Assembly: GCF_032191835.1 (NCBI RefSeq)
Contig: NC_083226.1
Coordinates: 136,896,001-136,960,000 of the forward strand
Origin: Heteronotia binoei
Lineage: Eukaryota
Direction of reading: 5' to 3'
DNA length: 64,000 bases
Shown here: positions 1,672 through 33,680 of the stretch, one piece after another
How positions within the stretch are numbered: the first letter of the stretch is position 1
How the letters are laid out: every line of letters starts with the position of its first letter
Notes under the pieces: generated by a model
Seen by the model: the letters and a program-made list of their open reading frames with translations, nothing else
Told to the model about the DNA's origin: nothing
The model's database searches: none
Translations under genes and position numbers: made by a program

Positions 1672-1747
1672 ATGTACTTGTTTCTGCAGATGTTGTTTCT
1701 TTTGTTCAGTATATCCTGCACCTTATTCAGCACAGCAAGAGCAAAAA
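1672..1747 (+). CDS. F2R-like: PAR1-like receptor A, coding exon 1 (signal peptide)
   Basis: ATG 1672 encodes hydrophobic MYLFLQMLFLLFSISCTLFSTARAK, followed by the donor A|GTAAGT at 1748 (phase 1). Homologous to exon 1 of copy B (shared TTATTCAGCACAGCA and upstream TTCCAGTCCAGGCAAC). Confidence 0.85.
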
Positions 1748-2016
1748 GTAAGTACCACACAATAGAATGTGTCTATCATTTCAAATCTGCAGCTTTTGTA
1801 CATGGGGTGGGGGGGAGAGTTATGGTTCTCACACATTTTGCTTTAGTTCTTAGTGAAATTTCACTCATTATATTTCTAATGGCTGTACTACATTATATTT
1901 CTAATGGCTGTACAGAATGACAATGAAACTAAAAGAGAAAGGGGAGGCTAGCAGTAAGAATATTCCTGTTCTAGGAACATTTGCATGTCAGTGTATTAAG
2001 TCTGTGTACATAATGT

Positions 2017-6497: not shown

Positions 6498-6959
6498 ACA
6501 GCAGCTACTATGAACGTTATTTTAAAGGTCTGCGGGGCCCCAATTTGGCTCTGAATGATGTAGGGGTAGGAGGGGCGTCTGCCTTCTCTGTGTGCCAGAC
6601 CTTGGAAGCAGTTTTTTGCCTCATATTGGAAATGTACATGCAGAATCACTCACTGAGGAAGCCAGGCATTGAACATGGGAACTTCTATATGCAAGATAAC
6701 ATGTTCGTCCACTAAAATACAATCTGGGCATAAAACGTTTCTCAAAGAACTAGATTTGTACTGTTTATTTATTATTTACAACCCCCTCAATTTTGTCAAT
6801 GTAAGAGGCATGGAATATAGAACAAGGCATTTTGGATGTTCTTCTCCCTAATAATAGAGGAACCCAAACTGAGAAGGTATAACAATTTTATCAACATGGA
6901 TTAATTTTTAAAAGCTTAAGTATTCCTATAATTGATTCACACAATACTTTCTCTTTCAG

Positions 6960-8128
6960 ATTCATCTTTACATGTTATGATTTTTTCCCATGCAATTACT
7001 GTTTTTAAAGTGAAGTCTGGAAATCAATCAAACAATTTTACTCAAACCACCACTTACATTAACATCTCAGAAGATGCTGAAAGATACCTGACTAGTGTAT
7101 GGCTGACCCGCTTTGCTCCTGCAGTGCACACTCTTGTTGTTGCATTGAGCCTCCCTCTGAACCTCATGGCAATCTTTATGTTTGTGATCAAAATGAAGCT
7201 TAAGAAACCAGCCGTTGTGTACATGTTCAACCTGGCTTCCGCTGATGTGCTCTTTGCGAGCGTGTTGCCTTTTAAAATTTCCTACCATTTTTCTGGACAC
7301 CACTGGACCTTTGGACCGGAAATGTGCCGCTTTGTCACTGCCACTTTTTTCTGTAACATGTACTGCTCCATATTGTTGATGACAGCGATAAGCATTGACC
7401 GCTTCCTGGCAGTGGTGTACCCAATGCAGGCTCTGTCATGGCGCACGGTCAGGGGTGCCTTTGTGGTGTGCTGTGTCATCTGGCTTGTTGCCATAGCTGG
7501 GGTTATACCTCTGGTTATCACAGAACAAACAAAGAGAATCCCTCAGTTAAACATCACTACCTGCCTTGATGTGCTCGATGTATCTATTGTTATGAAAATG
7601 TTTCATTATTATTTTCCTGCATTATCTTTTTTCTTCTTTTTTATACCAGTAATAATTTCTACCACCTGCTATGTGTGCATTATAAAAAAACTTAATTCAT
7701 CTAAAATTACTGCTACAAAGCCTGGTAAGAAGAGGCGGGCCAAACTCTTGTCTGCAGCTGTCTTGTGTTCTTTTATTTTTTGTTTTGGGCCAACGAATGT
7801 CTTAGTGGTGGTGCAAAGCTTCTTCTTTCCACCTGATCAACCACTGAAGAGTGTCTCTTATGCCATTATGCTGGCGATCTGTATGGGCACCATCAATTGT
7901 TGCATTGACCCCTTGATTTATTATTATGCTTGTTCTGAGTGTCGAAAGAAGGTCAAGAAGCTCCTGTGCCTTAAAGAGCATTCTGAGCTTGGAAAAGGAA
8001 GTCAGACAACCAGTAGTAGAATGGGAACTTTTTCTAATGATTTGAATCATTCAGTGAAGGTATGTACTTATGATGAGTCTGGCAACGTGGTGGGTGGAAA
8101 GTGCCATCCAGTTGCAGCCAATTTATAA
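6960..8128 (+). CDS. F2R-like: PAR1-like receptor A, coding exon 2 (7TM GPCR); spliced product 414 aa
   Basis: Acceptor CTCTTTCAG|AT at 6959/6960, phase 1, matches exon 1. PAR1-type motifs ISEDAERYLTSVWL, SLPLN, NLASADVLF, CNMYCSILLM, SIDRFLAVVYP, FGPTNVL, CCIDPLIYYYA. Stop TAA 8126-8128. Probably a paralog, not the thrombin-receptor ortholog. Confidence 0.93.
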
Positions 8129-8296
8129 TGGCCCATAGGGTTTTCAAGGCAAGAGATAAACAAAGGTGGTTTGCTATTGCTTGCCTCTGTGTACCACACT
8201 TGGATTTCCTTGGTGGCCTCCTATCCAAGTAGTAACCAGGGCCAACGCTACTTCGCTTCTGAGCTCAGGCTAGCCTGGACCATCCAGGTCAGGGCT
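8087..8296 (-). mobile_element. 5S-Sauria-type SINE overlapping the stop codon of PAR1-like A
   Basis: GTGGAAAGTGCCATCCAGTTGCAGCC...GGGTTTTCAAGGCAAGAGA...GGTGGTTTGCTATTGC is the antisense Sauria tail. CCTATCCAAGTAGTAACCAGGGCC...CCAGGTCAGGGC is the 5S-like head. Confidence 0.7.
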
Positions 8297-8413
8297 CTGA
8301 CATAATATACTAATTGTAAATCATAACTTTTGCATGTTAGAGATGTGAATGTAGTGGATGTCTTCAATTGATATTGTTGTGAAATTGTCTGGTTACTTAG
8401 AATGGGACTGTTA

Positions 8414-8788
8414 GGCTGATAACAGATGGCTGGAAATAGAGCCGGCTGGAAATAGAGCACCCTGGAGCTTCTGGATGGCGCTCGAAAAACGGGCAGGCCG
8501 TGGGCACCTGGAGAGCATCTGGAACACTCAAGCATCCTGTTCATGGCTCCCTGGGTGCTCTTCAGGTGCTCCCCAGCCTTCCAGATGGCCAGGAGCCATC
8601 TTGGAGATGCCCCAGCGAAAAGGCACCACTTTTGCCATGGTGCCTTTTTTGAGGTGGGTGGAGCGGCCTTGAGGACGGGGTGAATACATGATCAGGACAG
8701 CCACCAGATGTTGTCGTCTGGAAGGTTTTTTTGGGTCAACTTCAGAGGCGTCTCTGAGTCGACCCAAAGTGCCAGTCTGTAATCAGCC
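8414..8788. mobile_element. PIF/Harbinger-type MITE, 375 bp
   Basis: Imperfect ~19-bp TIRs GGCTGATAACAGATGGC / GCCAGTCTGTAATCAGCC with a TTA target duplication on both sides (8411-8413, 8789-8791). Confidence 0.8.
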
Positions 8789-11700
8789 TTACTGTGCCTA
8801 AAGCGACTGAGGAGGTACAACAAAAGAATGTGTTTCTCAGTGGCTGTAGATGTTTCTTCAATGTGTACTAATTGTTAGGAGAAAAGCTCCTGATGTTATT
8901 CATAGATTCAGAGGAGTTAGCCATGTTAGTCTGTTGCTGCAAAATAGTAGAGTCCTGTAGCACCTTGAAGATTAACAAATTTTATTATAGCATAAGATTT
9001 AAAGAAACAGGAAATTCCCCATTTGTCTGGTTAGCTCCATGAGGGTGGCTAGAAGATGTGAAATCTGTGGGAGGGGGGAAGCTACAGTCACTTCTCCCTG
9101 TGTTCTGTGGTGGCAAACAAAAGAGCTAGTGGCATCTTGGGGACTAAAGTCCCATCATGCATGTGATGCAAAGTCCTTGTGTGATGTGCAAAAAAATGCA
9201 AGGATTGGGGAGAGTTGAAATCTCCACTCTGCCATAAAACTTGCTGGGTAACCTTGGACCGCTTCATTTCTGTTAGCCTAAGCCAAGTTGCAAGTTTGTT
9301 GTGAGCATAAAATGGATGAGAGGAAGACAACATATGCTGCCCTGAACTCTTGAGTCCTTGGAGGAACTGTAGGATAGTTATGCAATAGGTGATGAAGATA
9401 CATAATTTTTAATTACTGATGGGTAGGCATGTTGGTTTGTAGCAGCAAATAAAGCACAAGTCCTCTAGATTCCAGTTTTATAGTTTGAGTATGGAGAAGA
9501 GAGAAACAGGACAGAGAATATGCTATGAACTGGCTGAAGTGTTTTAGACTGCTTCTCACTCATTCATCACTTACACATGAAGTTGCCTTATACTGAATCA
9601 GACTGTTGGTCCTTCAAGGTCAGTATTGTGTAGACTGACAGTGGTTATCCAGTGGTTCAAGCAGAGGCCTTTCACATCACCTGCTGCCTGGTCCTTTTAA
9701 TTGGAGATGCCAGGGATTCAATTTGTATAAATAAAGGAAATGTCACAACTCTCCAGACCTCTTCCCTGCTCTTTAACTGAAAGGAAACCAAATTCAGCTA
9801 GCCTCTGGAACTTCTCACTGCTGCTGGAAGTGGGAATCATCTAACAATATTCATATATTTCTGTCTCTAAGATATCATAAGATTATTTAGATAGTTATCA
9901 CACACAGTCCTGTGGTTTTGAGACACGTTATCCATTATTTTGTACCAATATGTAACATAAATAGGAAAAATATGCAATCCCCCTCATCTTTATCCCAAAA
10001 GCTTCAGTTATTTTCATTACATTCATTATTATTACCATTAACTTTCATTTGTTTTAATTTCCACTAGTTTCAATAGATATATATTTCTGTTTATAATGGA
10101 TCAGTTTTCCACTCTATTTGGATGTTCTCAGGGACTGTGTACTCCTTTCACAATAGACACCTGTCAAATTTTAGAAAGGTGGGAGAAAAGATTCCAGTAT
10201 TACAATAAATTAATTTTTTCACTTGACTGGCAAACATTTAGCATTCCCCAAAGACTGTCAGTCTTAAAGAATTAGTAGCGTTTGACCATCCAAGATGGTC
10301 AATATGACAGCACAGTCTACAATGATGGCTTGGCTCCACCAACAAGTCAGGCAACATAACAGGAATTAGAGAGATAAGCCTGTTACCCTAAGAAGGCAGA
10401 CACTAGTTTGCCTTTAACATCTACAAGAAGGCATGGTTTGCATCAGCACAATGGATTGGCTGCAGACTGGCATGTGGAATTCCAAGAAAGCCAATGCCAA
10501 GAAAGCCAAGAACAGGCAGGCAAAAACTGGCAACCTGGACCCAAGGGAAGTAACGTAGTATATTCAGGAGAATGTACAGAACATGGAATACATAGGAAAG
10601 CAAGTGGCAGTGGGGATACAGAAACTGAAAGCTTGCATCCTCAGCAAGACAAGGCAGCAGGGCATAATAAGCAGAGGTTGGCCTTTCCCCAAGTATTGAA
10701 GGGTGAACCATTAATGAAAGCTGCAAACATTTCTGTACAGTTCTCCCCTGTTACAAGATGTACTTCACTTCAATTATTAGGAAGGTACGATGGTAGTTTC
10801 ATACCTCCTTTGATGCTCACTCTGCTCTCTATCCAGATGCCATTGAAACTAATGAAATGTTCTGTTGTTTCATTTTGTTTTGTTGCAATAATTAATATAG
10901 GGATGTCCTCAGTTCACTTAAATTCGTTTCCAAATTAATTCGCATCCCTAGAGCTGTCATTCATGGCAGTTCTACACTACTGTGGCCATGCAAAATTGCC
11001 CCATTTTAAAGCATTCCACTTTAAGGCCTTGTCCATATCATGGAGTGCAACTCTCACAGGTCCCCCTCCCTGTTTATATATAGAAAGTTCTTTACAGGGC
11101 AGCAGGAGCCAAATTTTAGGCTTTTGCTCAAAATCAGATGTGCAACAGAAGATGAGGTTTTATAAGCCAATGTTATTTATTTGTCTGTTTTGTTTGTTTG
11201 TTTATGGAATTTCTGTCCTCATCAAGGCCACCAAGGCAAAATAGGATTGTACTCTATTGCACTCTTAATTGTATGTATCACTTTGCTCTTATTGCATTGT
11301 CTTCTCCCTTTGCCATTTTCTGCATCATTTTATAGTACATCGTGCCTTAAGACAGCTTTTATTTGTACTGTTTTCTAATTCTGTAATCCTAGACCTGGTC
11401 ATATTGCACAATTTATTAGATGTGCTGTTTGACTTAAATTTTAAAATATTGTATAAGTCATCTTGACACTCAGTAAGAAAAGCAAGGTCTGGTTGGATGG
11501 GCAGTGCCTGGTGATATTTCAAAAACTGGTGAACTGTGCTGGAAGGATTTCCAATAGCAGACAGAATGTGAGTTAAGGTGTACCTGAGTTTCCATTAACA
11601 CTTCCCTACTAAGTGCTTTGGCCAATAGCAACCCCTTAAAACCTGATTATAATTCCATAACTGTTTTCTATGGATGTATGATAAAATACACTGCCAATGT

Positions 11701-12990
11701 AAGATCAAAATGAAATAAACAGTACTGCTGGTGACAATAAGATATCTCTGTTTTATTGATAAATGTCTATGGAATGTAGAACCTTACCTGAAATTGTGCA
11801 AGGATTTCTAGCAGGCTGAAAAAAGGATTCCAGTGTGAACAGATGGCTCTGGAAAAACTTGGCAAGCTGATCACAAACTTGGCAAGCTGATTGACTATCT
11901 TTTCCACTTGCCAATGGCTGCTTTCAGCCTGAAAATGTCCAAGACCTAAATAGTGTCCAAAACCTGGTGTGGCTTTATTTCATGTAGGGTCTACACATGC
12001 AGCAGTTTGAGGCAGCAGAATCCTCATGTCATGGACTTGAGTGTGCTAGAAATGAAAACCAAACCTGAATTCTCTTGAGCTTCCCCCTGCATTTTCTAGG
12101 CCTTCCCCTATTGTCCAGAACAAGGCCATTTTAGATCCTCTAAGCCTTCTTGGTCTTTCTAAGAAGCTAATGCCTGTAGTCTTTCTCTGAAACAGTGTTA
12201 TTTTAAACACCAGCTGAGAGACAGCAGGGTAGACAGGCTTATCACCCTGAAGGTCAGTTGTTTGGAAGGAGAACAAGGAACTCAGAGACATGCACAATGA
12301 GAACATACAGTTTCCGAAGGTCTCATAAGGACCCAAGGAGGGTCCAACCATCTTATCATACCAAAGACTTTTGCAACATGTACGGAACATATAATTTTTC
12401 ATGATTACTCTGATGCATAGTAGTCTCATAAGGCAGTTTTTCATAACAGAATATAAAATGACTGCCCCACAAGCAGCAAGGGATCGTCCTTCTGCACAGG
12501 AGAGTCCACCCTGCTCTGTCAGTCTGTTCTTTTCTACCCACTGCAGGTGAGCTCTACTGGAGAAATGTACTCTGTCTGAAGAAGTGTTCATGCATACAAA
12601 AGCTTTGTTGATCTTAAAGGTGTGTCTGGACTCAAACATAGGACTGTCTGTACCTATGTTTGTCTTTTCTTCCTGGCACAATCTAGAAGTCTGTGCAGGA
12701 TTGCTTCTAAATTGCTTGCTGTCTGTTGTTGGATACATTCCGCTTTGGATGAGAGCCTGTTTCTTTGAGCCTTTGTGCCTTTAGGAGTGAGAGCAGCAAG
12801 AGTGCTTACAAGATAAGATTCTGCAGCTCTTGAGGAAGGCCCTGATCCTCCCTTTCACAACAAGGTTGCATCGATGTGACCAAGTTGTTGAGAGAATATT
12901 TCCCCAGGGGCTTAGAGATCTTGATGAAGAACTGCCCTCTGCCGTCCACCGCTGTGAAGTAGGACAGGACCAGATTCCGTAGCTGCAATC

Positions 12991-13123
12991 TCACACACTA
13001 AATAGTGCACTTTCAACCCACTTTCAGTGCACTTTCCAACTGGATTCTGCTAATTCATGCAGTAAAATCCAGTTGGAAAGTGCATTAAAAGTGGGTTGAA
13101 AGTGCACTATTTAGTGTGTGTGA
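12991..13123. mobile_element. Palindromic MITE-like element (second copy 55191-55328)
   Basis: ~56-bp near-perfect inverted arms TCACACACTAAATAGTGCACTTTCAA...GGATT / AATCC...TTGAAAGTGCACTATTTAGTGTGTGTGA. Confidence 0.8.
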
Positions 13124-15310
13124 TCACAGACCCTGTTTCCAACAAGTGAACCACTGCACCTGGGGAATTCTGTGACAATACTCCCTCAAAGATCCTACAA
13201 TTGAAAATCTCCAGACTATTGTGGGGAGAAGTTCTGTCCCAGTGTGTTTTCTACTATACATGTCATCATCTACTTGCAAGGGGTTTTCAGTGTATACAGC
13301 AGAACTGCAAATTACACCCTCTGGTTTGAAACTATACAGTCCATGTTGTGTCACCTGATTCTTCTGTATGTATAGACCAGACCTCTCTCTTGATCTTTCT
13401 CAGCCCTGCCAACTGAGTTCTAAAACAAAGCCATGAAGGGCAAGATCAGCAGCATGGCGTGTTACTTCTTGGAGCCTCCTTTCACATTCCTGGAGCATAT
13501 AAGGATTTAAGAATGCCACTAGATGGCGCCCGAATAGTAAAGTTACAGTCCAGTGCACATTTTCTTTGCATCAGTCTCCACTGAACTTTGGGTAAACACA
13601 TGCACAGCATATAGCTACATTATTTTGTATATTTCACTGAATCACCTAATGTTGTTTACATTAACATATGAACATAAGAAGGTCCCTGCTAGGTCAGACC
13701 AAAGCAGCTAAGCATTTAAAAACTCCACTAAGATGGCTCCTGAACATCTTCACTGTCCCATAAACCCTTCTTGTAATTTGAAATTAGTTTTGCACCAAGT
13801 CACCTACAACTTACAATTCATACCATTTCAGGTTCCTACTCCTGCTCATCTTCTAATGTGATTTATGTCAACAGTGCCCTTCCACTCTCTACATTGGACA
13901 AACAGGCCAGCACCTTTGACAAAGAATTAATGGACATAAGTCTGATATCAGAAAACACAACATTCAAAAAACAGTGGAACATTTTAACTTTCCAGGACAT
14001 TCAGTTGTAGACCTAAAATTTTTAACGTTTTTGAGGAGTTAGAAGTAACATTACTTGTGTGAAGGCAGCAAACAGGACGGAAGCTGTGGTCCTAGACTGA
14101 TGAAAAGGCTGTGTTTGTGCTCTTCAGCATAGCACATTTCAAGTTTCTTCTCCATATAAGGGAAAATAAGAAGCAAGCATCACAAACTCAGAACTACATC
14201 TGCCAATCGCACATTCATTTGCCAACTGCATCTTCCCACATTCTCTAGCTGCATTATCTTTTGTGCATAGATTAACATGATTATATTGTTTCTTGTTTCT
14301 TGAGACAAGTATGGAAAGAAGTTTATTATACAGTTTCTAAAAAAGAACTCTGACAATTCTTCTGCATCACCCAGAGCAGACTAGGGAACAAAAAATGGCT
14401 CTGGGAAAGGGCCTCTCATTCCCCAGCTTTCCCCCAATCCCCAAAGGAGTTCAAAAGGTGAAGCTTTACTCTCTGTCAGTTTTCTCTACGCCATACATGA
14501 TTATATAAATCTCTGTCATGTTGCCTACACCAGTAACTATTTGCTCCCCAAGGATGGAATAAAGAGTCAGACACAGAGTATTGGTATAAAATTGGGCCAC
14601 TTTATTCAATATTCTAATAAACAGCAAGGGTACCCCACCAGCGGCCTGGCCAGGGCTAGGGGTCACCGCGGCCACTCCCCTGCCATTAACGGGCGAGAGA
14701 CCGAGTCCCCCAGCTGGAGATGAGTGTTACTCAGCTCCCTCCAGGCAGGCCCAGCAGGGAGGCACGCACCAGAGGGCCCAAACCCAGACGCACGTCTCGT
14801 CAGAAAGGCACCCTCTAGCTGAGCCTCCCAGACAGTCTGCATTCTCCAAACCCGGGTCTTTAAACCCAAAGGCTGATCATGCCAGACCCCAAATTCCCCA
14901 AAAGGGGGATGCTTCACAGTCCTCCCCTAGCTGCATAGTGCCCTAAACTCCAAAAACCTGCCACTACTAAGGCCAAGTCTCTACTTAGGGCTTAGTGCCC
15001 ACCGGGAGGCCCAAAGCCACCAGCAACCCTTTCTGCAAATCTCTCAGGAAGCATATTAACCTTTTCCGAGAGATGGACCCCATTCCCTCTGTAGAGGTCA
15101 GAAAATTTCAAAAAAATGTCCGGATGGGGCAAATAGTGGCCCAATCCCTTTCCCAGCACCTTCCTGATCTCCTTATTAGCCTTATACCGGGCCCTTTTTA
15201 TAGCTTCAGGGTCCCAAGCACAACGCCACACCAGGCGGGGTAGCATGGCTGACCAAATTATGGTGGTTCCATGCCATCGCTCCCGAATGTGCTCGAAATC
15301 ATCCCGGGCG

Positions 15311-16213
15311 TGATATCCAGGAAGACACCCCTGTACTTATTCCCAAGCCATGCACCCCTGGAATGTGATATTGCAATGTAACCCTAGAATATTAAATATG
15401 ACACAGCAATGCCCATTTGAATTGGAATGGTCTCTCTTGCACATAAGGGAGAAAAATCCAGTTCCTTCTTAGCCCAAAGCAGGCTGTGGTGTGGTTCTGG
15501 TTCACAAGCCAGAACAACATGTGGCCAGCTGGAAGGTTGAGAAGCGTCCATCTTTCTGCTCCTGGGAATGAAAAAGTTCCGGGCTCAGAGAGAGACAAAT
15601 GTGGGCAGTGCTATAAAAATTCCTCCACTCTTTTGGCAACCTTTAAAGTCCTGTTAAAGAAATAAGAATGACCCAAGAAACCTCCAACACAAATAAATGG
15701 CTTGTCTGTTATTCCTCAGGGCAAGACAGCAGGTTAATTGAGTGATGTGACGTAATTTACCCTAGAAAACAGGCAACCCCACCTGTCAGGTGAGATGGTT
15801 GAAGAAGAAGAAAAAAGGAAGGAAAAAGGGAATCCCTTCATCCTCTCCTTCCTCCACCCCCTTCCTACCCTCACCCCACCCCTCTTCTCAAGAGAAATCT
15901 CCCTCCAGAGGCCTTGTATTTCCTCTGACTGAGTCTACCCTGCAAAGATCTAGGTATTGTATCACTTTCCCCCATCCATACTGATTCAGCTAACCTCTTT
16001 TGTATTCCTCTTGTATGCTTGAAATTGTTTGATTGGGATGTAACTATTTGAAAACCTATGCTATAATAAAATCCATTATTAACCAAAGGATTTTCAGTGG
16101 TCTATCTCCGTAGACATAGACATAGATCCTGTACACCTCACCTCTCGTAGGCCTACCATTTTGAGCTAAGAAATATTAATATTCCTCAATAAAAGGTTGT
16201 TTGAGGTGTAACA
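15311..16213 (+). mobile_element. Solo LTR (~900 bp) inserted in the Ngaro SGNH ORF
   Basis: TG...CA termini (TGATATCC...GTGTAACA). 4-bp flanks GGCG/GGCC. CTATAAAA ~15611, AATAAA ~16066 and ~16188. Removing it rejoins GKALVWQA-RDDFEHIRERW. Confidence 0.72.
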
Positions 16214-16649
16214 GGCCTGCCAAACTAAGGCCTTGCCCTTTAAGAGTCTCAGATCGTTACCTCCCAGGTGAACAATTAAAACCTGAGGAGGAGGACCCAT
16301 ACAGTCTTTAAACACCAAAGGCAGCAGGCCCGGCCACTGAAGGCCCCAGCGCCCCCGCCATTCAATACACACATGCTGGCTGAGTCCCAGCTGAGAGCCA
16401 ACCGCAGTTCTCTGAGCCTGATGAGCGGCCCAAAACATGTGGCCATGGCCGCATACGAGAACTCGGCTCCTCTGGCCAGGAGCAACAGCATCTAAAGAGA
16501 GAAAACAGTTAAACAAGAACAGAACCAACAATAAACAGACACCAAGTCACTCAAGGCCTAATAAAAGGTCGCACGTAAGCCTTATAGGCCGAGGAACACC
16601 ACCTTGTAAGGAAAGCCCCCTACTTTTCATACATATGAACATCGTGATC

Positions 16650-17807
16650 ACCAGTATGGTTGCCAGGATGCCTGGAGTTTTGACTCTCACATATCTGCTC
16701 TAAGAAGTGGACTTTGCTTACAGTTTCTAAGGCTTATGTGGATACTATAAGCCTCAGTTTTGCAGCAGCATTCTACATCTGGATGGGTGTTAGCCAGAAC
16801 TACAGAAGTGCTGCCAGCTAAAAGAAGCCATGCCACCATGAACTGTACAAGCAAACAGTTTCCAGCCTGTCTCCATGAACCAAAGGCTAGCACCACCAGA
16901 ATCCATCTTGTTTTCCTGACTTCATATCCTACTGCTGCTTCAACTTTTACATAAGGCCATCAAGCTTATCCAGGCATGGATCCTGCCAGACCACTCAAGC
17001 ATTTGTTTAATGAAACCCAGGACAAAGACTAGGTGCCAGGAAGAAGATAGAAAAAGAGGAAGATCATCTTCTACATGAGCTAAGTCTTTGTCTAATCCGG
17101 GTGATACCTAGGTCAATATTTGAGTCTCTATTGTCACCTTTTCAGATAAGCTCATATAATCTTAAGTGTTCCCCATCCAGTAATCACTTCTATTATTCTT
17201 CCCAACTGTCATTTTGGAGCTTGCCCCCACGGCCTGTTTCAATCTGAAAGTTCTTTCAGGTACCCAGGATCCAGGCAAGTTCATTGGTCAAGACAGGTAC
17301 CCAATTAGGTGTCACCAAGGAACTTGCTATTGGCTCTGTAATAGTCCAGCCCTCCTGGTCATTGCAGAGCCTCCCCTTTCTCCTCCCTCTGACCTCCCAG
17401 CCCCTGAGGGTCTAAGGCAGTCTATTTAACCTCTGACCCAACTCCACTCGTGTGCTTCTATCAGTAACCCACCTTCCGCTGCATAGATCCATCCCCGATT
17501 CCTGATCAGTTTCGGGTCCCTTCCCCCTCCCTGTCCTCTTTTGTCGCCATCGGAGCCTTCTTCGAAAACTAAGAGAGGTAATATAACCCTGTATGTCAAT
17601 CCTTATATGTTCCCCTATCGATCTGTCTATATTTCCTAGGACTGTGTGAATGTGTGATTGTATTTGTATCCTGTATGAACGACTATATTTTTCTCAATAA
17701 ATTACAATTGGTTTTATTAAATTAGAATCCAAATATTTGAGCATCACTCTCTGGTTGGTGGATCTTGTATACAAAGGTAAAAAGATTCCGAGTGAGCCTG
17801 GTGCCCA
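16650..17807 (+). mobile_element. LTR-like insertion between the Ngaro recombinase and SGNH ORFs
   Basis: Several ATTGG boxes, TATTTAA ~17422, AATAAA ~17696, ends ...GTGCCCA. Left boundary and TSD not resolved. Confidence 0.4.
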
Positions 17808-17812
17808 CCTAA

Positions 17813-18700
17813 CTAATTCCCCAACCTCGTTTGGAGGGCATTTAGGCTAACAACCTGCCCAATCTCTGAATGGAAGTGGAAGGATACCCCATTACCTGCT
17901 GTTGAGGCTGCCCCAATTCTAAAGGAGTGGGTCCCAAACTGCACCCCAGACAACCCCAACTCACCCAAAGCCCGTGACATTACTGCCCAAAACTGATGCA
18001 ACCATTCAAACCATTCGAATGTATAAACAAAAACCCCTCCATGGGCCCCCTAACTGCCAAAGAAGAAGCCAACGCAGTAACTGGACACAGCTCAAGATCT
18101 GAACAACAACCCAACTCGAGCACCGTACCCTTCTGCAACTGATCCGTCTTAGAGCGATGGACAGTGATGACTGCCTTACCCGCAAATAGCTGCAGATCCC
18201 TTAACAACAGAGCCTTACCAGAAACATCGTTTCTAGACCAGCTCACTTACTCTAAAAGCCCCAAAAAAGGCTAACAAAGGCGCAGCGTGAAACAAACATG
18301 CTTCAAATGACGAAGCACACACCACGTCCCAAACCCTCTTCAAACCCCGCAGAATCAAAGGAGACACAGGATTCGGTGTATCAACCCTGGGACTGGCCTC
18401 TTTGGCCCACCCCTCCAGCATCTTTCGAATACGAAAGTCAGCTGTTTCTTCCCTATAACCCAGCGCCTTACTGACAAAAGCCAATGCAGACAGGCGCCCC
18501 CTAATGGCTTGCACAGCCAACCCCTTACCTCGCAGCAAAACACGGTAATGGAGCAAATGCTCTACCGGGAGGGGCCAAACCCCGCAATACCCTACCTCAG
18601 CCCTAAAGTCTTCAAACTGCTGCACAGCCCGTTCGTAAGACTTCCTGGTGCTGGGCAAAATAGCTAGACCTATTGCTCTGCAGGCCTCGGCTCTCCAATC
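17813..18700 (-). pseudogene. Ngaro tyrosine recombinase, frameshifted into three ORF pieces
   Basis: MADWRAEACRAIGLAILPSTRKSY...AFRVSELV; VITVHRSKTDQLQKG...CPV; GTHSFRIGAASTA. Confidence 0.85.
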
Positions 18701-19376
18701 AGCCATAGCTCCTGGGGCATTGGCACCGGCTCTTTGTCGGCATCTGGGGCCAGCTGACAAAACCTCTCCATCTGTTTACGAGATAGAGCATCAGCCACCC
18801 CATTACTCACCCCAGGAACATGCTTGGCTAAAAACAAAATGTTAAGCCGCAAACAGCACAGAGTGAAGGCCCTCACCAATCTCATAACCCGGCCAGATTT
18901 GGATGAAAGGGAATTAATGACGTGGACCACCGTCATATTATCACACCAAAAATGGACAGTGTGATTGGCCATATCCTTCCCCCACAGCCAAACCGCGTCT
19001 AAAATAGGAAAGAACTCGAGAAACGTAAGATCCCGGTTCACACCAACCTTTACCCAGGAGTCAGGCCAACTATCCGCGCACCAATGTCCACGGAAATAGA
19101 CTCCAAAACCCAAGAAACCAGCAGCATCATACATGACCTGAAGCTCAGCTTCGAGCCTCATGTTGTCCCTCCAAAAAGAGACTCCATTAAAGGACTCCAA
19201 AAATTCCTGCCAAACCCTCAAATCATCCCTCTTGCTGCAGGTGACCCTAGTTCTATGCTGAGGCAAGTGTAACCCTGCCATAGCATCGCACAGCCTTCTA
19301 AGAAAAGCCCTCCCAGGAACAGCCACTTTGCAAGCAAAGTTGAGGTGCCCAACTAGCTGCTGCAACTCCAACAAAG
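18670..19376 (-). pseudogene. Ngaro RT thumb plus RNase H remnant (RT catalytic core deleted)
   Basis: DIRS-type RNase H motifs are present. No YxDD. Joined directly to gag sequence at ~19376. Confidence 0.8.
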
Positions 19377-20005
19377 TCCAAATACTGGAACAGGGATGCT
19401 GCCCGCCACGGCTGCGCCCTCGCAATCACCCCGGCATAAATAAAGAACCCAGGAAGCCAATTAGCCCAGGTCCTGTCCACCTTCTGTTTTTTTCAATTTT
19501 TCCTTCTCTTTCTCATCCAATTCTTCCTTGTCTTTTGTCTCAACCTCCCAAAAGAGAAGAGAAAAAATATCCACGTACTCCCCTTTTAATATTTTTTCCC
19601 TAGTAGCGGGAAGCAAGTGGTCTCCCAGCGGCAAGGCAACCTCCCCAAATGGCAAAACAGCAAAAGGCACCATCCCATATGTTGAGGGTGCCCCCATAAA
19701 GGAACCAGCCATGCCAGGATGCCCTGCGCCCGGGTACACACTAGAAACGCCTTGCCCACATGGCCAAGCCCAATTCTGAAATGCACCCAACGCAGAGGAG
19801 GCAGACACCCCCGCATTTGACATGGAAGCGCCCTGCCCGGCCGCCAAAGCAGGCCCCCATGCTCCCCATGGCCAAACCTGCCCAGGCCCCGCCTGCAAAT
19901 TATCACTCGACCTACCTCCGAATCCAGCAGGAACCAATGGCAAACCGACCCCTGATGCTCCAGCCGCCGCCATCAAACCCGCATCCGGACTGCAAAGGCC
20001 AGCAT

Positions 20006-20538
20006 TAGGGTTGCCAAGTCCAATTCAAGAAATATCTGGGAACTTTGGGGGTGGAGCCAGGAGACTTTGGGGGTGGAGCCGGGAGAAATTAGGGGTGGGG
20101 CCAAGATCAAGGCTGTGACAAGCATAATTGAACTCCAAAGGGAGTTCTGGCCCTCACATTTAAAGGGACGGCACACCTTTTCAATTCCTTCCTTCCATAG
20201 AAAATAATGAAGGATAGGGGCACCTTCTTTTTGGGCTCATAGAATTGGACCCCTGGTCCAATCTTTTTGAAACTTGGGGAATATTTTGGGGAGAGGCACT
20301 AGACGTTATACTGAAAATTTGGTACCTCTATCCCAAAAAACAGCCCCCCCCCCCCGAGCCCCAGATACCCGCAGATCAATTCTCCATGATTTTCTATGGG
20401 AATAAATCTCCATAGGGAATAACAGAGTTCCCAGCAGACATTTCCCTCCCCTCCCCCCGCTTTCTGATGACCCTGAAGCGGGGGGAGGGTCTCCAAACCG
20501 GGGGATCCCCTGCCCCCACCTGGGGATTGGCAACCCTA
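20006..20538. mobile_element. hAT MITE (Blackjack-like TIR), 533 bp, inserted in Ngaro gag
   Basis: TIRs TAGGGTTGCCAA / TTGGCAACCCTA. Perfect 8-bp TSD GCCAGCAT (19998-20005, 20539-20546). Confidence 0.93.
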
Positions 20539-22199
20539 GCCAGCATCCCTGCCAGGCACGACTCCACTAGACCTGCCCTCAAGAATAGACAACCTGATGA
20601 GAATACTCGCCTGCTTACCCTTCTTAGATTGCCTCACACCATCCTCCCCACCTGGAGAAAGGATGCCCGCTGCCTGTTCCAATGCTCTCAATCTACAAGC
20701 AATATTGGAATCAACCACCATATCACCCTCCTCATCAGAAGAGGATAACAGTGGTGGTGGCCTTTTCGCAGGAGCCTTGGGCGCCTTAGGCGCTGGCTTT
20801 TTTCCTTTGGGCTTGCCCGACCCTTTTTCACCAGCCATCTAAATAGCAAGCACAAGACCACAAAATGGCCTCCTGCAGCTCCACTTTAAAATGGCTTCCC
20901 CCTGGAAGAAGAAAGGGAACTCAAAATGGCCACAAAAGCCGCTGCTGCACACCAATGTCTCCAGTAGGAGAAAAATGGGGGGGAGGGGGAGGCTCTCCAA
21001 AATAGTCACCTGCCAATCTCAAGGGCAATAATAAAAAACCCAGGTTGCCCCACAGGCCCACACCCTCAAAAATTAAAAGGGGAAAGACCAACCCCTGGGC
21101 TCCACAACCCCTGCCCCAGCAGACCCCAAACCCTAGGCAGACTCAGCCAACAAGGACACCGCCTCCACCGCCTCCGATGCCACCGCCAGCCCGCAGCACT
21201 GCAGCCGACGCTCCAGCCGACACCGATGCTCCAGCCAACACTTCAGCTGCCGCTGCCCAGTCAACTGCCCTAATAAACCCCGACGTCCAACCAAAAACAA
21301 AAGAAAAGCCTCAGCCTCAGCCGATCGTCTGCCAAGACGAAGGAGCCGATGAGGAGCATCCTGCCTTTTCCTCTGCGTGCCGAAACGGGTGCCCCCTGAC
21401 TCTTCCCATCCAGGGAAGCAAACCCTGCTCATGCAGCCTAGCAGCTACACTGCAGTCTGCAAGCATAAGATTCTCTAAATTAAAAAGGTCCAAATATACA
21501 GATTTCTGTTGTATGAAAATAATTCATTTTGGTTGACTTTTTACTATGTTTTTTTACCAGTGTATATAGCATAATTTTATATATTTTTGCATTTTCCCAA
21601 CTACTAAGCAATTAAAATTTTTAGGAGCAATAGTACTAGTAGAGTTTATTTTCTTTTGAATGAGCATGCACAGGAGTCTTACAGCATCTTGTAAAATTTG
21701 TATTATTTAAAAGTATACAGGGGAAGCTCAGGTGCAGGGGATGAAGTCTTCCTACAGGGCAATGGGTCTCCAACATCAACTCCACAGAGAGAACCAAGGT
21801 GAGGCTTTGTACATCAAAGTGTTATGCAACACTGTCTTTGGGGTGGGGGACAACATGTGCACAGGCATGTATAGTTTCCCTGCTGCTGCTGCTGCTGCTT
21901 CACAGCAGCAATGGGACTTCCACATGGTAGGTTTCCTTGTAGTTTCCCTGTCTCCTAGCGGTGGCCACTCACATGCACACTGCTACCGGAGATTTCTCAC
22001 TCAGTTTCTCTCTCCAAAGCTGCCAAGCTAGGGTTTCTTCAAATTTATAAGGAATAACAATTTTTGTAATCAGCAATTAGGAATCTCATTCAAGAAGTTA
22101 TTGATATCAGGGGACCGTGATTGATTGATTCAATTTATAAACCTTCTCTTAACAATTAGGAAAAATCCAGTCAACAGCCCTGATTCCCATCAAATGACA

Positions 22200-22520
22200 A
22201 AAGGAAAAAGGAAAGGAAAGGTCCCCTGTTCAAGCACCAGTCGTTTTTTACTCTGGGGTGACGTTGCTTTCACAACGTTTTCACGGCAGACTTTTTACGG
22301 GGTGGTTTGCCATTGCCTTCCCCAGTTATCTACACTTTCCCTCCAGCAAGCTGGGTACTCATTTTACCAACCTCGGAAGGATGGAAGGCTGAGTCAACCT
22401 TGGGCCAGCTACCTCAATCCAGCTTCCGCCGGAGTCAAACTCAGGTCGTGAGCAGAGAGTTCAGACCACAGTACTGCAGTACTGCTGCTTTAGCACTCTG
22501 TGCCACGAGGCTGCTCAAAT
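22200..22520 (-). mobile_element. Sauria SINE
   Basis: Antisense Sauria body: AAAGGTCCCCTG...GGGGTGGTTTGCCATTGCCTTCCCC...GCTGGGTACTCATTTTACCAACCTCGGAAGGATGGAAGGCTGAGTCAACC. Confidence 0.85.
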
Positions 22521-23303
22521 GACAAAAACATGGCAATTAATCAATTATTGTCCAAATCACAATACTCAGTTGGAAATTCACAATACAAAGGATTTACTTT
22601 TCTGGTCCTTTTATTTCAGATCATGTCTGAAAACCAGCAGAAAATAGGCATTAGAAGCCTCAACTGGCTCAGCTTTTATTCAGAGCAGATAGATTTCCTA
22701 GTCTGATATTATAAATACATTCTCTCCATGATGGTCGTTAGAAACTTGCAGTATGCCAGATGGAAATCATTTCTCTGTTAACACAGTCGACTTCAGTAAA
22801 CATTGTAATTTAAACCAGAAACACCAGCTACTCTGATAAACAGAGATAAAAACCATCAACAGCACAGGAATCCAAGGTCAGTTTATGTAGCAAGGATGCA
22901 TCTGCACTGTTATCTCCCCCCTCCCCTAACCTCCAAAGCAACAAAGAAAAGACATTTTCCTTTGGTACCAGGACGCTGCTCACTTAAGGAGGGAAATAAA
23001 TTCGCAGAGTTGTCTAAGTGATATTTTTTTAAAATCAATCAGGAGGGAGACATTAAAAACCACAGTCATCCTTTTCCTCAGTTCTACCCTTTCCTTAGTT
23101 AGGTGGGGATGGTTCTTGGACTGTGTGGTTAATGTTGTGTCTCCTCTCCTGTTCTTTTAAGTTAATGGTCATGCTCAAATGGGACAAATAATGGACTTAG
23201 ATTTTTGCAGATCAGAAAAAAGGCATTTTAGCAGCCCAGCTGGGAACTGTTTTTTGCTTGCAGCCTTTTCTTCCAGTCCAGGCAACCAAATTCTAGAGTA
23301 GAA

Positions 23304-23370
23304 ATGGACCCTTCTCTGCAGGTGTGGTTGTCTGTCCTCTGCATCTTATTCAGCACAGCAGGAGCAAACA
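23304..23370 (+). CDS. F2R-like: PAR1-like receptor B, coding exon 1 (signal peptide)
   Basis: GAAATGG start. Encodes MDPSLQVWLSVLCILFSTAGAN, then the donor A|GTAAGT at 23371 (phase 1). Homologous to exon 1 of copy A. Confidence 0.87.
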
Positions 23371-24250
23371 GTAAGTACAACCTACCATGGTTTTTTTAAC
23401 ACCAGTCACTTTAGCTCAAGAGGGAGGGGAAGGGCTATATGTTCCCTGTTTGTTACTTTTTCTTTGTTGTGGAATTTCACACCACCTTTTCCTATGGATT
23501 GTGCCTTGAAAGACAGCCAAAACTAAGGGCGGAACAGAACACTTGAGTTCTTGAGAGATTTTCTTCCCAGTGTTTGTGGGATGTTTTTGAGTATGTGTAA
23601 TAATTTATTTGGCATTTGATCCTAAAAGATGCCATTCCAGCTAAAAATCACAAAAATACAAACCAATAACTCTGAATTTTGCACAAAATAAATGTAATCC
23701 ATACACTATCCATCGTTTGTCACTATTGATTGTACTCCCATTCTTAGGGAGGTTTTTCGCATAGAATCTAGTACATTACTAAAGAGGTACTTTCACACAC
23801 ACACACACTGAACATAACCTTTCATACATCTGATGAAGTGAATTCCAGCTCTTGTAAGCTTATGTCAGAATAAACTTGTTACTATTTATGAAGCTGCAAA
23901 ACTCTTTACTTATTAGAAGTAAAGTCACACAAGTTCTTTCTGGCCACTCTTCAATGCTTCATGATCCTTTTTAGGATATATCCCTCTCCCTATTTTCCCA
24001 CCCAAGCATATCAAACTGTGGAAGATGTGGATGCAGTTGTGCATATTCATCACTTATAAGAAAAACAGCTTAGGGGAAAAGAATGGTGTTTCTGCTTTTT
24101 CATTGTTTTTATGTTGTACCACGCAGCTTTTAATTGGAAACTACATCAAGCACTTTGGTGAAAGAGTTATATATACATTACTAGATAAAACAAATGAATG
24201 TATTAGTGTCTGGCATGCATGTGCAATTAATATATTGCTTCATCTTTCAG

Positions 24251-25350
24251 ACTCATCGTATCCTGATATAGTATTATTTACTTCAGTATTCACTTCTATC
24301 GATCATGAGTCTGGCATCAATCAGAGCAATCAGAGCGAAGAGCACATCATTATTTCAAATGACACTGAAAGATACCTGACTAGTGTATGGCTGGCCTGGT
24401 TTGTTCCTTCAATCCACACTCTTGTAGTTGCATTGAGTCTTCCTCTGAACATCATAGCAATCCTTATGTTTGTGATCAAATTAAAGATTAAGAAACCAGC
24501 CACTGTGTATATGCTCAACCTGGCCTCTGCTGATGTGCTGTTTGTGAGCACACTGCCTTTTAAGATTTTCTATGAGTTTTCTGGACGCAACTGGATCTTT
24601 GGACCAGAAATGTGCCGCTTTGTCACTGCAGCCTTCTACTGCAACATGTACTGCTCCATACTGCTGATGACGGCGATAAGCATTGACCGCTTCTTGGCAG
24701 TGGTGTATCCAATGCAGGCTCTGTCATGGCGCACAGTAAGGCGTGCCTCTGTGGCATGCTGTGTCATCTGGCTTATAGCCATAGCTGGAGTTACCCCTCT
24801 GCTTATCACAGAACAAACTAAGAAAATCCCTCAGCTAAATATTACTACTTGCCGAGATGTGATAGATTTGTCTGTTGTGTTGGAAATACTTCAGTATTAT
24901 TTTTCTGCATCAACTATTTTATTCTTTTTTGTACCATTAATAATTTCTGTCTCCTGTTACATTTGTATTATAAGAAAACTTAGTGCATCTAAAATAACTC
25001 CTGAAAAACCTGGTAAGAAGAGGCGGGCCAAACTCTTGTCTGCTGCTGTCTTGTGTTCTTTTATTTTATGTTTTGGGCCTACTAATGTCTTGGCCTTGGT
25101 GCAAAACTTATTCCTTTCAGCTGATCAAAGGTTTGAGGGTCTCACTTTTTCCTACATGCTAGCTCTCTCTATTGGTACCATCAACTGTTGCATTGACCCA
25201 TTGATCTATTATTATGCTTCTTCTGAGTGTCAAAGGCAGGTCAGGAATCTCTTTTGTCATAAAAAGCATTCTGAGTTTGATAAAAGTCAGACAACAAGCA
25301 CTAATATGGGGACCTTTTCCAATAGTTTGAATCATTTATCTCAAGCATAG
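24251..25350 (+). CDS. F2R-like: PAR1-like receptor B, coding exon 2 (7TM GPCR); spliced product 388 aa
   Basis: Acceptor CATCTTTCAG|AC at 24250/24251, phase 1. Same PAR1 motifs as copy A, uninterrupted. Stop TAG 25348-25350. Confidence 0.93.
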
Positions 25351-33603: not shown

Positions 33604-33680
33604 TAAGAACATAAGAACATAAGAAGAACATAAGAGAAGCCATGTTAGATCAGGCCAATGGCCCATCCAATCCAACATTC

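What the first reader, a model, noticed from the sequence alone, without database searches (positions are those of the whole stretch)
7230..25210. Ligand pocket rewritten while G-protein-facing loops stay almost identical
Seen: between A and B, ICL2 (SIDRFLAVVYPMQALSWRTVR) and ICL3/TM6 (KPGKKRRAKLLSAAVLCSFI) are identical. Late ECL2, the top of TM5 and ECL3 differ strongly (VSIVMKMFHYYFPAL vs LSVVLEILQYYFSAS; QSFFFPPDQPLKSVSYAI vs QNLFLSADQRFEGLTFSY). The PAR-wide ECL2 motif TCHDV, retained in F2RL1 here, is TCLDV in A and TCRDV in B. The TM6 HY pair of PAR1 becomes QS/QN, and the TM1 Tyr (VYT) becomes His in both. Established: these positions correspond to the human PAR1 extracellular ligand pocket (H255, H336/Y337, Y350/Y353 region). 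Inference: diversifying selection on ligand recognition with conserved signalling, a pattern typical of immune or chemosensory receptor arrays.
Basis: partly seen in the sequence, partly recalled or inferred. Interest (0 to 1): 0.72.

Follow-up and report, generated by a model that had tools for sequence, protein, structure and literature searches.

The report
Two diverged PAR1-like gecko receptors
A gecko genome carries two neighbouring copies of a thrombin-receptor-like gene that keep different ligand-binding tops on a shared signalling base, a mosaic produced by old divergence plus gene conversion, with no detectable ongoing diversifying selection.

Summary
The window (Heteronotia binoei) carries two tandem PAR1-like genes: A (exon 1 1673-1748, exon 2 6960-8128) and B (23304-23370, 24251-25350). 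They lie between canonical F2R (outside the window) and F2RL1 (61367-62466).

A and B are 73% identical in the receptor core. A 34-residue TM3-ICL2 run and a 20-residue ICL3-TM6 run are identical (P=0.0003). At TM6 top, ECL3 and TM7 top, 14 of 18 residues differ (P=0.0007). Residues that hold the tethered ligand in human PAR1 (H255, Y337, Y350, Y353, also H336 and a TM1 Tyr) are invariant in 18 amniote PAR1s and in F2RL1. All are replaced in A, and all but Y353 in B.

Most of these replacements are old and shared by a lepidosaur-wide PAR1-like family. The A/B-specific ones are conserved across four A and six B gecko orthologues. Codon tests on ten sequences find no omega above 1 (M2a vs M1a p=0.75; post-duplication stems about 0.6). 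The outer/inner omega ratio matches canonical PAR1. Identity of TM1-TM4 and ICL3-TM6 owes much to gene conversion. Heteronotia A and B both lack a basic residue at the cleavage-site position; all B orthologues have Asp.

Reading: an anciently diverged, still constrained receptor pair. Diversifying selection is not shown.

The parts
1673..1748 (+). Gene A exon 1. It holds an ATG, a 25-codon signal peptide plus 1 base, and a GTAAGT donor (phase 1). It is missing from the NCBI model of A.
   Evidence: Read. A 43-bp match to B exon 1 was found. Intact homologues with the same phase occur in Gekko, Eublepharis, Paroedura and Sphaerodactylus.
6960..8128 (+). Gene A exon 2. It runs from the acceptor (cag|AT) to the stop and encodes the N-terminal exodomain, 7TM, helix 8 and tail (388 full codons from 6962).
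   Evidence: It is 100% identical to the NCBI protein 'proteinase-activated receptor 1-like [Heteronotia binoei]' over that model's shared part. AF2 model.
6962..7141 (+). A residues 1-60: N-terminal exodomain and TM1 outer half. This is a paralogue-specific block (orthology pattern) and has no Arg/Lys at the site homologous to the PAR1 cleavage site.
7142..7501 (+). A residues 61-180: TM1 inner half to TM4, including ICL1, ECL1 and ICL2. This tract is homogenised between A and B by gene conversion. The B counterpart is 24430-24789.
   Evidence: Quartet site patterns, region tree, AU tests p=3e-4 and 2e-6, dS by block, and Eublepharis A/B dS near 0.
7502..7681 (+). A residues 181-240: TM4 top, ECL2 hairpin (TCLDV) and TM5. 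This is a paralogue-specific block.
7682..7801 (+). A residues 241-280: TM5 end, ICL3 and TM6 inner half. This is the second conversion tract. It includes a Lys codon (AAA) shared by Heteronotia A and B where the other six gecko A and B sequences have an Ile (ATA) or Val (GTA) codon. The B counterpart is 24970-25089.
   Evidence: a run of 17 matching polymorphic sites at residues 254-265, P=0.011.
7802..8128 (+). A residues 281-388: TM6 top, ECL3, TM7, helix 8 and C-tail. This is a paralogue-specific block. It holds 10 of the 15 residues diagnostic for A versus B across geckos, nine of them within residues 282-302.
23304..23370 (+). Gene B exon 1: a signal peptide of 22 codons plus 1 base, with a GTAAGT donor.
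   Evidence: matches NCBI protein P0004.
24251..25350 (+). Gene B exon 2, from the acceptor to the stop (365 full codons from 24253). It has Asp at the cleavage-site position (SYPD|IVLF).
61367..62466 (+). F2RL1 (PAR2) exon 2. It keeps a basic site (KGR|TFIRQN) and all canonical pocket residues, and serves as an internal control.

Best explanation
A and B are two intact members of a PAR1-derived ('PAR1-like') receptor family. The family sits in tandem between F2R and F2RL1 in lepidosaurs, and A and B split in the gecko stem lineage.

The family's activation module differs from canonical PAR1. This module is the N-terminal exodomain plus the pocket made by TM1 top, ECL2, TM5 top, TM6 top, ECL3 and TM7 top. 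The thrombin-type site and the hirudin-like stretch are absent, and the residues that hold the tethered ligand in PAR1 and PAR2 are replaced.

After the gecko duplication, each copy fixed its own version of three blocks: the N-terminus, ECL2/TM5, and TM6 top through the tail. Each copy has kept its version under purifying selection since then.

The segments between these blocks (TM1 inner half to TM4, and ICL3 to TM6 inner half) encode most of the transducer-facing core. They are kept alike by purifying selection and by repeated gene conversion between the neighbours.

Shown here: gene structure, ancestry, the mosaic, and the constraint pattern.

Inferred: each copy pairs a private N-terminal peptide with a private pocket. 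On this reading the two respond to different, non-thrombin triggers while sharing the G-protein interface loops (ICL2, ICL3).
For: Identity and locus:
- Both carry Pfam 7tm_1, and the best solved relative is PAR1 at E=8e-122.
- The nearest named proteins are 'PAR1-like' from geckos and other lepidosaurs.
- The gene order is IQGAP2, F2R, A, B, F2RL1.

History:
- The A clade (4 geckos) has support 100/99, the B clade (6 geckos) 100/99, and A+B together 99/98.

Intact genes:
- ORFs are open, splice sites and signal-peptide exons are conserved, and overall omega is 0.3-0.4.

Pocket:
- Six pocket positions invariant in 18 canonical PAR1s and in F2RL1 are all replaced in A, and five of the six in B (Y353 is kept). 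The replacements are conserved inside each orthogroup.
- The nine pocket positions have a relative rate of 0.24 in canonical PAR1 against 1.82 in the PAR1-like family.
- Loss of canonical-invariant residues is enriched on the outer face.

Durable A/B differences:
- 15 diagnostic residues all fall in residues 213-324, in addition to the N-terminus and the tail.

Mosaic:
- Species-pattern sites fill residues 61-180 and 241-280, and orthology-pattern sites fill the remainder.
- Trees from different segments conflict, and AU tests reject orthologue clades in the tract and species pairs in the blocks.
- Run tests are significant, and dS differs by block.
- The elements that keep paralogue identity are the same ones the cryo-EM papers list as tethered-ligand contacts: TM1, TM5, TM6, TM7 and ECL2.

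Core constraint:
- The G-protein core shows 0 nonsynonymous against 10 synonymous differences.
Against: - There is no expression or functional evidence. No RNA run was listed, and NCBI's model of A lacks exon 1.
- AF2 gives no confident placement of the N-terminus, either uncleaved or starting at the putative new N-terminus of B.
- Helix 8 and the C-tail are also paralogue-specific. The 3' block may therefore simply lie outside the reach of conversion, so signalling regulation may not be fully shared.
- 44% of codons in conversion-free blocks fit omega=1, so part of the divergence may be drift.
- A's exon 2 is deleted or fragmentary in Paroedura and was not found in the Sphaerodactylus stretch examined. 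The Heteronotia A tip has omega about 1 (p=0.15). A may therefore be dispensable.
- The selection tests used only 10 sequences and 115-200 codons, so power is low.
- The outer/inner classification rests on an AF2 model with mean pLDDT 72.
Confidence: 0.6

Rival explanations
1. One reading: ongoing diversifying (positive) selection on ligand recognition, of the kind seen in immune or chemosensory receptor arrays, with conserved signalling.
For: - Differences are concentrated on the outer face.
- Pocket positions are among the fastest in the PAR1-like family.
- The N-terminal cleavage-site region is hypervariable between paralogues and lineages.
- Copy number varies between lineages.
- N-terminal omega is near or above 1 in some pairs, though counts are small.
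Against: - No omega>1 class was found (M2a vs M1a 2dl=0.56, p=0.75).
- Stem omega is 0.62 and not above 1.
- The outer/inner omega ratio is no larger than in canonical PAR1.
- A/B-diagnostic residues are conserved across all sampled gecko families.
- A-to-A and B-to-B comparisons show no outer-face excess (odds ratio about 1).
Confidence: 0.12
2. An ordinary GPCR pattern combined with relaxed constraint. The copies, A especially, are drifting or decaying duplicates. Outer loops vary because they are always the least constrained, and the inner core looks identical because of conversion.
For: - Canonical PAR1 pairs at similar identity also show an outer excess (odds ratios 1.3-1.8).
- The M1a fit puts 44% of codons at omega=1.
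- PAR1-like omega is 2-3 times that of canonical PAR1 on both faces.
- A exon 2 is lost or not found in two gecko lineages.
- The Heteronotia A tip has omega about 1.05.
- Heteronotia A alone carries Y183F.
Against: - ORFs, splice sites and signal-peptide exons are intact in several species whose lineages separated early in gecko history.
- Diagnostic residues are fixed and conserved within orthogroups.
- The G-protein core shows 0 nonsynonymous against 10 synonymous differences at a dS of 0.29, so recent conversion alone does not explain it.
- Residues invariant across PAR1 and PAR2 are replaced by clade-specific conserved residues, not by random ones.
Confidence: 0.2
3. The receptors have left tethered-ligand activation altogether. 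They act as receptors for a soluble ligand, as constitutively active receptors, or as co-receptors or decoys for canonical PAR1 in the manner of PAR3.
For: - The basic cleavage site, the hirudin-like stretch and the tethered-ligand contact residues are all lost.
- The exodomain is short.
- No PAR3-like sequence was seen at the mammalian position next to IQGAP2.
Against: - A hydrophobic N-terminal motif at the tethered-ligand position is conserved among gecko B orthologues, and a similar motif occurs in tuatara.
- Some family members keep Arg at that position.
- The relay residues below the pocket (F182, M186, I190, F271) and the G-protein core are kept.
Confidence: 0.08

Closest known systems
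Vertebrate PAR1 (F2R, thrombin receptor)
   Same: A and B are 55-61% identical to it over the receptor. They share the gene cluster and the two-exon layout with a phase-1 intron just before the cleavage-site region. They keep the TM3-ECL2 cysteines, the DRF and DPxxY motifs, the ICL2 residues M208/L211/S212, and the relay residues F182, M186, I190 and F271.
   Different: Heteronotia A and B have no Arg/Lys at the cleavage position, and there is no hirudin-like acidic stretch. The exodomain is about 40 residues shorter. H255, H336, Y337 and Y350 (and Y353 in A) and the TM1 Tyr are replaced. ICL3 S306 is Gly, and the C-terminus differs.
Lineage-specific PAR1 expansions in teleosts (PMC4771116)
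   Same: Extra PAR1-type copies arose in one vertebrate lineage.
   Different: That survey reports a single PAR1 copy in reptiles and expansion only in teleosts. The lepidosaur family seen here is a separate expansion, known to me only from automated 'PAR1-like' annotation.
PAR3 (F2RL2)
   Same: It is a PAR family member that departed from autonomous thrombin signalling, so it is a useful analogy for a diverged paralogue.
   Different: It is not orthologous. A and B are far closer to PAR1 than PAR3 is, and they lie between F2R and F2RL1, not next to IQGAP2. The statement about PAR3 function is from general knowledge.
Tandem paralogues homogenised by gene conversion except at specificity-determining segments (for example primate red/green opsins; from general knowledge)
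   Same: The exon is a mosaic of converted tracts and conversion-resistant blocks that carry the functional difference.
   Different: Here the resistant blocks are the tethered-ligand region and its pocket in a PAR-type receptor. Whether selection or simple sequence divergence blocks conversion there was not tested.

Membership tests
PAR1 (F2R) gene lineage, by descent | Rhodopsin-type 7TM receptor whose closest relatives are PAR1 | tested here: met
   Pfam 7tm_1 at E=5e-55 and 1e-54. PDB PAR1 at E=8e-122 against PAR2 at 1e-63. The protein search returns PAR1 and PAR1-like proteins.
PAR1 (F2R) gene lineage, by descent | Position in the IQGAP2 - F2R - F2RL1 cluster | tested here: met
   F2RL1 lies downstream in the window. 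In Paroedura and Sphaerodactylus, F2R and the PAR1-like gene lie tens of kb apart on the same record, and IQGAP2 lies just upstream of F2R in Heteronotia and Paroedura. The exact F2R-to-A distance in Heteronotia was not seen.
PAR1 (F2R) gene lineage, by descent | Two coding exons: a signal-peptide exon and a phase-1 intron just before the cleavage-site region | tested here: met
PAR1 (F2R) gene lineage, by descent | TM3-ECL2 disulfide cysteines and the DRF and DPxxY motifs | tested here: met
   C122, C201, R147 and P317 are invariant columns; alignment.
Canonical protease-activated receptor (tethered-ligand activation by trypsin-like proteases) | Arg or Lys at P1 of the N-terminal cleavage site | tested here: not met
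   At the homologous position A has SLHV|MIF and B has SYPD|IVL. All five B orthologues with DNA in hand have Asp. Canonical gecko PAR1 has GPK|TF or GPR|TF, and F2RL1 has KGR|TF. Gekko A (Lys) and Eublepharis A (Arg) have a basic residue nearby.
Canonical protease-activated receptor (tethered-ligand activation by trypsin-like proteases) | Hirudin-like acidic exosite-binding stretch after the tethered ligand (PAR1 type) | tested here: not met
   The exodomain is about 40 residues shorter, and the acidic stretch of gecko PAR1 has no counterpart.
Canonical protease-activated receptor (tethered-ligand activation by trypsin-like proteases) | Tethered-ligand contact residues H255, Y337 and Y350 (with Y353) | tested here: not met
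   A has L, S, S, I and B has R, N, T, Y. These residues are invariant in 18 PAR1s and in F2RL1. Contacts are taken from PMC12033368 and PMC11443083.
Canonical protease-activated receptor (tethered-ligand activation by trypsin-like proteases) | Relay residues below the pocket (F182, Y183, M186, I190, F271) and the G-protein interface | tested here: met
   They are kept in A and B, except Y183F in Heteronotia A. ICL2 M208, L211 and S212 are kept, and S306 is Gly. The core shows 0 nonsynonymous differences.
Canonical protease-activated receptor (tethered-ligand activation by trypsin-like proteases) | Activation by proteolysis of the N-terminus | not testable with these tools
   This needs expression and protease or peptide assays.
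Receptor arrays under diversifying selection (immune or chemosensory type) | A class of sites with omega above 1 | tested here: not met
   M2a vs M1a p=0.75. Stem omega is 0.62. Power is low at 10 sequences.
Receptor arrays under diversifying selection (immune or chemosensory type) | Copy gain and loss between lineages, and exchange between tandem copies | tested here: met
   There are 1-3 copies per species. A exon 2 is fragmentary in Paroedura and was not found in the Sphaerodactylus stretch examined. Conversion tracts are shown.

The most novel reading that the evidence does not exclude
Lepidosaur PAR1-like genes form a small, turning-over family of protease sensors that have left thrombin. 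Each paralogue would carry its own bait or cleavage site and its own tethered peptide/pocket pair. Gecko B orthologues would then be opened by a protease that cuts after Asp, since the motif Pro/His-Asp|Ile is conserved in the five B orthologues whose N-terminal DNA was read. Gene conversion would keep a common G-protein-facing core.
Probability: 0.25. Interest if true: 0.8.

Novelty: new variant of a known kind. Interest (0 to 1): 0.5.

Why it matters
PARs are textbook receptors with four mammalian members, and their tethered-ligand contact residues are conserved between PAR1 and PAR2. A lepidosaur-wide PAR1 offshoot changes three things: the residues that hold the tethered ligand, the thrombin-type site, and the hirudin-like stretch. 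Yet it keeps the relay and the G-protein core under constraint. This is a natural experiment on how the ligand/pocket pair of a self-activating receptor can be re-made.

The only survey I found states that reptiles have one PAR1 copy (PMC4771116).

The gecko pair also shows cleanly how gene conversion and paralogue-specific constraint together produce a 'same base, different top' mosaic. That mosaic can be mistaken for diversifying selection.

Tried and rejected
- **RNA evidence:** The look-up of sequencing runs with A exon 2 listed no run.
- **AF2 models:** A exon 2 and B starting at the residue after the conserved Asp both left the first 22-23 residues below pLDDT 50. This gives no information on docking of a tethered peptide. 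No coordinates are available to scripts, so the outer and inner halves were set from helix midpoints.
- **Rooting with F2RL1:** this put the root inside the PAR1-like group on a branch of length 4, which I treat as unreliable. AU tests reject neither a lepidosaur-only clade (p=0.062) nor PAR1-like monophyly (p=0.255), so the age of the family is open.
- **Branch models:** a higher omega on the post-duplication stems was tested and rejected. A higher omega on the Heteronotia A tip was not significant.
- **Diagnostic-site enrichment:** 10 outer against 5 inner, p=0.18.
- **Literature searches:** no work on a squamate PAR1 duplication was found.
- **Other copies:** no further PAR-like remnants exist in the window.
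- **Codon likelihood code:** it was my own. Its M0 likelihood matched iqtree2 GY+F3X4 exactly at -2376.35.

Full report
**What is in the window.** Three rhodopsin-type receptor ORFs lie on the + strand. They are A (6932-8128 as an ORF), B (24025-25350 as an ORF) and a PAR2-type gene (61366-62466). The best solved relative of A is human PAR1 (E=8e-122), against PAR2 at 1e-63. The word-index protein search identifies the genome as Heteronotia binoei. A equals NCBI 'proteinase-activated receptor 1-like' over that model's shared part, and B equals a second such protein, P0004. A third protein of the species, P0025, is the canonical PAR1 and is not in the window.

**Gene structure.**
- B has a signal-peptide exon at 23304-23370 with a GTAAGT donor. 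Exon 2 starts at 24251 after a cag acceptor, in phase 1, exactly as in P0004.
- A has the same layout. A 43-bp match to B's exon 1 led to an ATG at 1673, 25 codons of signal peptide, a donor after 1748 and an acceptor before 6960.
- NCBI's model of A lacks this exon, starts at a Met inside TM1 and uses another 3' exon at 11991-12065.
- An intact A-type exon 1 with the same phase is present in Gekko, Eublepharis, Paroedura and Sphaerodactylus.
All searches and folds used exon 2 by reference, or database proteins.

**Locus and family.**
- IQGAP2 ends about 5 kb upstream of canonical F2R in Heteronotia and adjoins it in Paroedura.
- In Paroedura and Sphaerodactylus the PAR1-like gene follows F2R within tens of kb on the same record.
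- The order is therefore IQGAP2, F2R, A, B, F2RL1.
- PAR1-like proteins occur in geckos, lacertids, skinks, cordylids, teiids, amphisbaenians, varanids, snakes, Anolis and tuatara, often in 2-3 copies. All non-lepidosaur hits listed are canonical PAR1.
- In a 48-protein tree, canonical amniote PAR1 forms one clade. Gecko A (4 species) and gecko B (6 species) are each supported at 100/99 and are sisters at 99/98. The A/B duplication therefore predates the split of eublepharid, sphaerodactylid and gekkonid geckos.
- The age of the whole family is unresolved.
- A 2016 survey of PAR evolution reports one PAR1 copy in reptiles and expansion only in teleosts. I found no paper on this family.

**The observation.** All quoted strings are present. 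Two cryo-EM papers confirm H255, D256, L258, Y337 and Y350 as tethered-ligand contacts, and Y353, F271, Y183, F182, M186 and I190 as the relay. Identical runs and the cluster of differences are far beyond chance, and differences are enriched in outer halves (odds ratio 2.4, p=0.001).

**What the pocket change really is.**
- The TM1 Tyr, H255, H336, Y337, Y350 and Y353 are invariant in 18 canonical PAR1s from mammals, birds, a crocodilian, turtles and squamates, and also in the window's F2RL1.
- In the 28 PAR1-like proteins these positions vary between lineages.
- Their relative rate is 0.24 in canonical PAR1 and 1.82 in the PAR1-like set.
- Of 122 core positions invariant in canonical PAR1, those replaced in every A orthologue are 11/59 outer against 3/63 inner (p=0.022). 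For B the counts are 10/59 against 2/63 (p=0.014). They cluster in TM1 top, TM5 top, TM6 top and TM7 top.
- Most of these are changed in 64-100% of all PAR1-like proteins, so they predate the gecko duplication.
- Inside geckos the states are stable. A orthologues have L255, Q336, S337, S350 and I/L353. B orthologues have Q336, N337 (Tyr in Sphaerodactylus), T350 and Y353, with a variable 255.
- Only 15 residues separate all A from all B orthologues between residues 70 and 335. All lie in residues 213-324, and nine lie within 282-302.

**The N-terminus.**
- Canonical gecko PAR1 has Gly-Pro-Lys/Arg followed by Thr-Phe and an acidic stretch. F2RL1 has Lys-Gly-Arg followed by Thr-Phe.
- At the homologous place B has Tyr-Pro-Asp followed by Ile-Val-Leu-Phe. 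All five B orthologues with DNA in hand have Asp then Ile.
- Tuatara has Asn followed by a similar hydrophobic motif.
- Heteronotia A has no basic residue there, while Gekko A has Lys and Eublepharis A has Arg nearby.
- Other family members vary, and some keep Arg.
- The exodomain is about 40 residues shorter than in PAR1 and lacks the acidic stretch.

**Selection.**
- Whole-exon omega is 0.40 for A against B, 0.31-0.39 for orthologue pairs, and 0.17-0.21 for canonical PAR1 in the same species.
- After normalising by dS, the outer and inner halves differ little: 0.42 against 0.35.
- The 59 codons of TM3 inner half, ICL2, TM6 inner half and TM7 inner half show 0 nonsynonymous and 10 synonymous differences, which indicates real purifying selection.
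- I wrote a GY94-F3x4 likelihood. Its M0 value equals iqtree2's.
- In conversion-free blocks the outer part has omega 0.66 for PAR1-like branches and 0.26 for canonical PAR1. The inner part has 0.22-0.24 and 0.065.
- The post-duplication stems have 0.62 (outer), equal to the crown (p=0.89) and not above 1.
- M1a fits far better than M0 (56% of codons at 0.2, 44% at 1), but M2a adds nothing (p=0.75).
- The family therefore evolves 2-3 times faster than PAR1 on both faces, with no detectable positively selected class in this small sample.

**Gene conversion.**
- Sliding dS between A and B is about 0 over TM1-TM3 in Eublepharis and 0.1-0.25 over TM1-TM4 in Gekko. It is 0.20-0.26 around ICL3/TM6 in Heteronotia, against 0.5-1 or more elsewhere.
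- In species quartets, sites grouping the two copies of one species fill residues 61-180 and 241-280. Sites grouping orthologues fill 1-60, 181-240 and 281-388.
- The TM1-TM4 tree joins Eublepharis A with B (99/97), while the 3' tree recovers the A and B clades.
- AU tests reject orthologue clades in the tract (p=3e-4 and 2e-6) and reject species pairs in the blocks (p<1e-10).
- Run tests are significant in Eublepharis (p<2e-4). In Heteronotia they are significant at residues 254-265 (p=0.011), where both copies share a Lys codon in place of the Ile or Val codon of the other gecko sequences.
- In residues 61-180 all Heteronotia/Gekko A/B pairs have dS 0.3-0.4, so there is no orthology signal. 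In the blocks, orthologues have dS 0.03-0.28 and paralogues 0.4-0.7.
- The ICL2 identity lies in an older homogenised tract under strong purifying selection, and it is nearly the same in canonical PAR1.

**Reading.**
- The blocks that keep paralogue identity are the N-terminus, TM1 top, ECL2, TM5, TM6 top, ECL3 and TM7. These are the elements that touch the tethered ligand in PAR1.
- TM2-TM4 and ICL3/TM6 inner half are shared.
- This fits two private activation modules on a common transducer core, kept apart against conversion.
- Helix 8 and the tail are also paralogue-specific, and the A clade has lost the Leu-Ser-Gln-Ala C-terminus common in the family. Regulation may therefore differ too.
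- A is dispensable in at least one lineage. Its exon 2 is a fragment in Paroedura and was not found in the Sphaerodactylus stretch examined.

**Limits.**
- There are no expression data.
- AF2 is uninformative on the N-terminus.
- Few coding sequences were available.
- The N run at 33681-33811 was left as is.
- No human contig was met. Human PAR1 was used only through the PDB alignment printed by the tool.

Noticed in passing
window 1673-1748 and 11991-12065: NCBI's model of gene A (P0001) starts at a Met inside TM1 and ends in another exon at 11991-12065. A conserved signal-peptide exon at 1673-1748 is not used, and the open reading frame of exon 2 continues 24 codons past the model's internal donor.
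   Followed up: partly
L005 10001-24267 (Paroedura picta); L006 3768-10900 (Sphaerodactylus townsendi): In Paroedura only a C-terminal fragment of A exon 2 remains (11507-11855, in two tblastn pieces that overlap by 14 bases). The annotated protein joins the A-type exon 1 to B's exon 2. In Sphaerodactylus an intact A-type exon 1 sits 4.4 kb upstream of the B-type exon 1, with no A exon 2 between them. This may be an alternative first exon.
   Followed up: partly
window 7745-7786 (A codons 262-275) and the B counterpart: The TM6 inner-half codons are nearly invariant at the nucleotide level, synonymous sites included, in all eight gecko A and B sequences. This is more than amino-acid constraint alone would give, and it is unexplained (repeated conversion or a nucleotide-level constraint).
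   Followed up: no
window 25327-25350 (B C-terminus); A 8054-8128: Most PAR1-like proteins end in Leu-Ser-Gln-Ala, which resembles a PDZ-type C-terminal motif (from general knowledge). The A clade has lost it, through a 24-residue extension in Heteronotia and Gekko and an earlier stop in Eublepharis.
   Followed up: no
L007 5137-27687 (Heteronotia), L008, L009: No PAR3-like (F2RL2) sequence was found by tblastn between IQGAP2 and F2R or in the F2R intron, which is where the gene lies in mammals.
   Followed up: partly
window 7349-7351 (A codon 130): Heteronotia A alone among gecko A and B copies has Phe at the position of PAR1 Y183 (3.33), a residue whose mutation impairs PAR1 activation according to PMC12033368.
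   Followed up: no
window 61366-61420: F2RL1 exon 2 keeps a basic site followed by Thr-Phe-Ile-Arg-Gln-Asn and every canonical pocket residue. This contrasts with its two neighbours.
   Followed up: partly
L007/L008/L009 (canonical gecko PAR1): Canonical PAR1 has Lys at P1 in Heteronotia and Paroedura, not Arg, while Sphaerodactylus has Arg.
   Followed up: no
window 33650-37701 and 55774-57666 (- strand); 18233-19976 (- strand): There are two LINE copies. One has ORF1 with a GDSL esterase domain and an ORF2 whose truncated paralogue at 55774-57666 matches reverse transcriptase; it contains the N run at 33681-33811. The other is truncated. A GC-rich block between A and B holds three overlapping ORFs without Pfam matches and is probably another mobile element.
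   Followed up: partly
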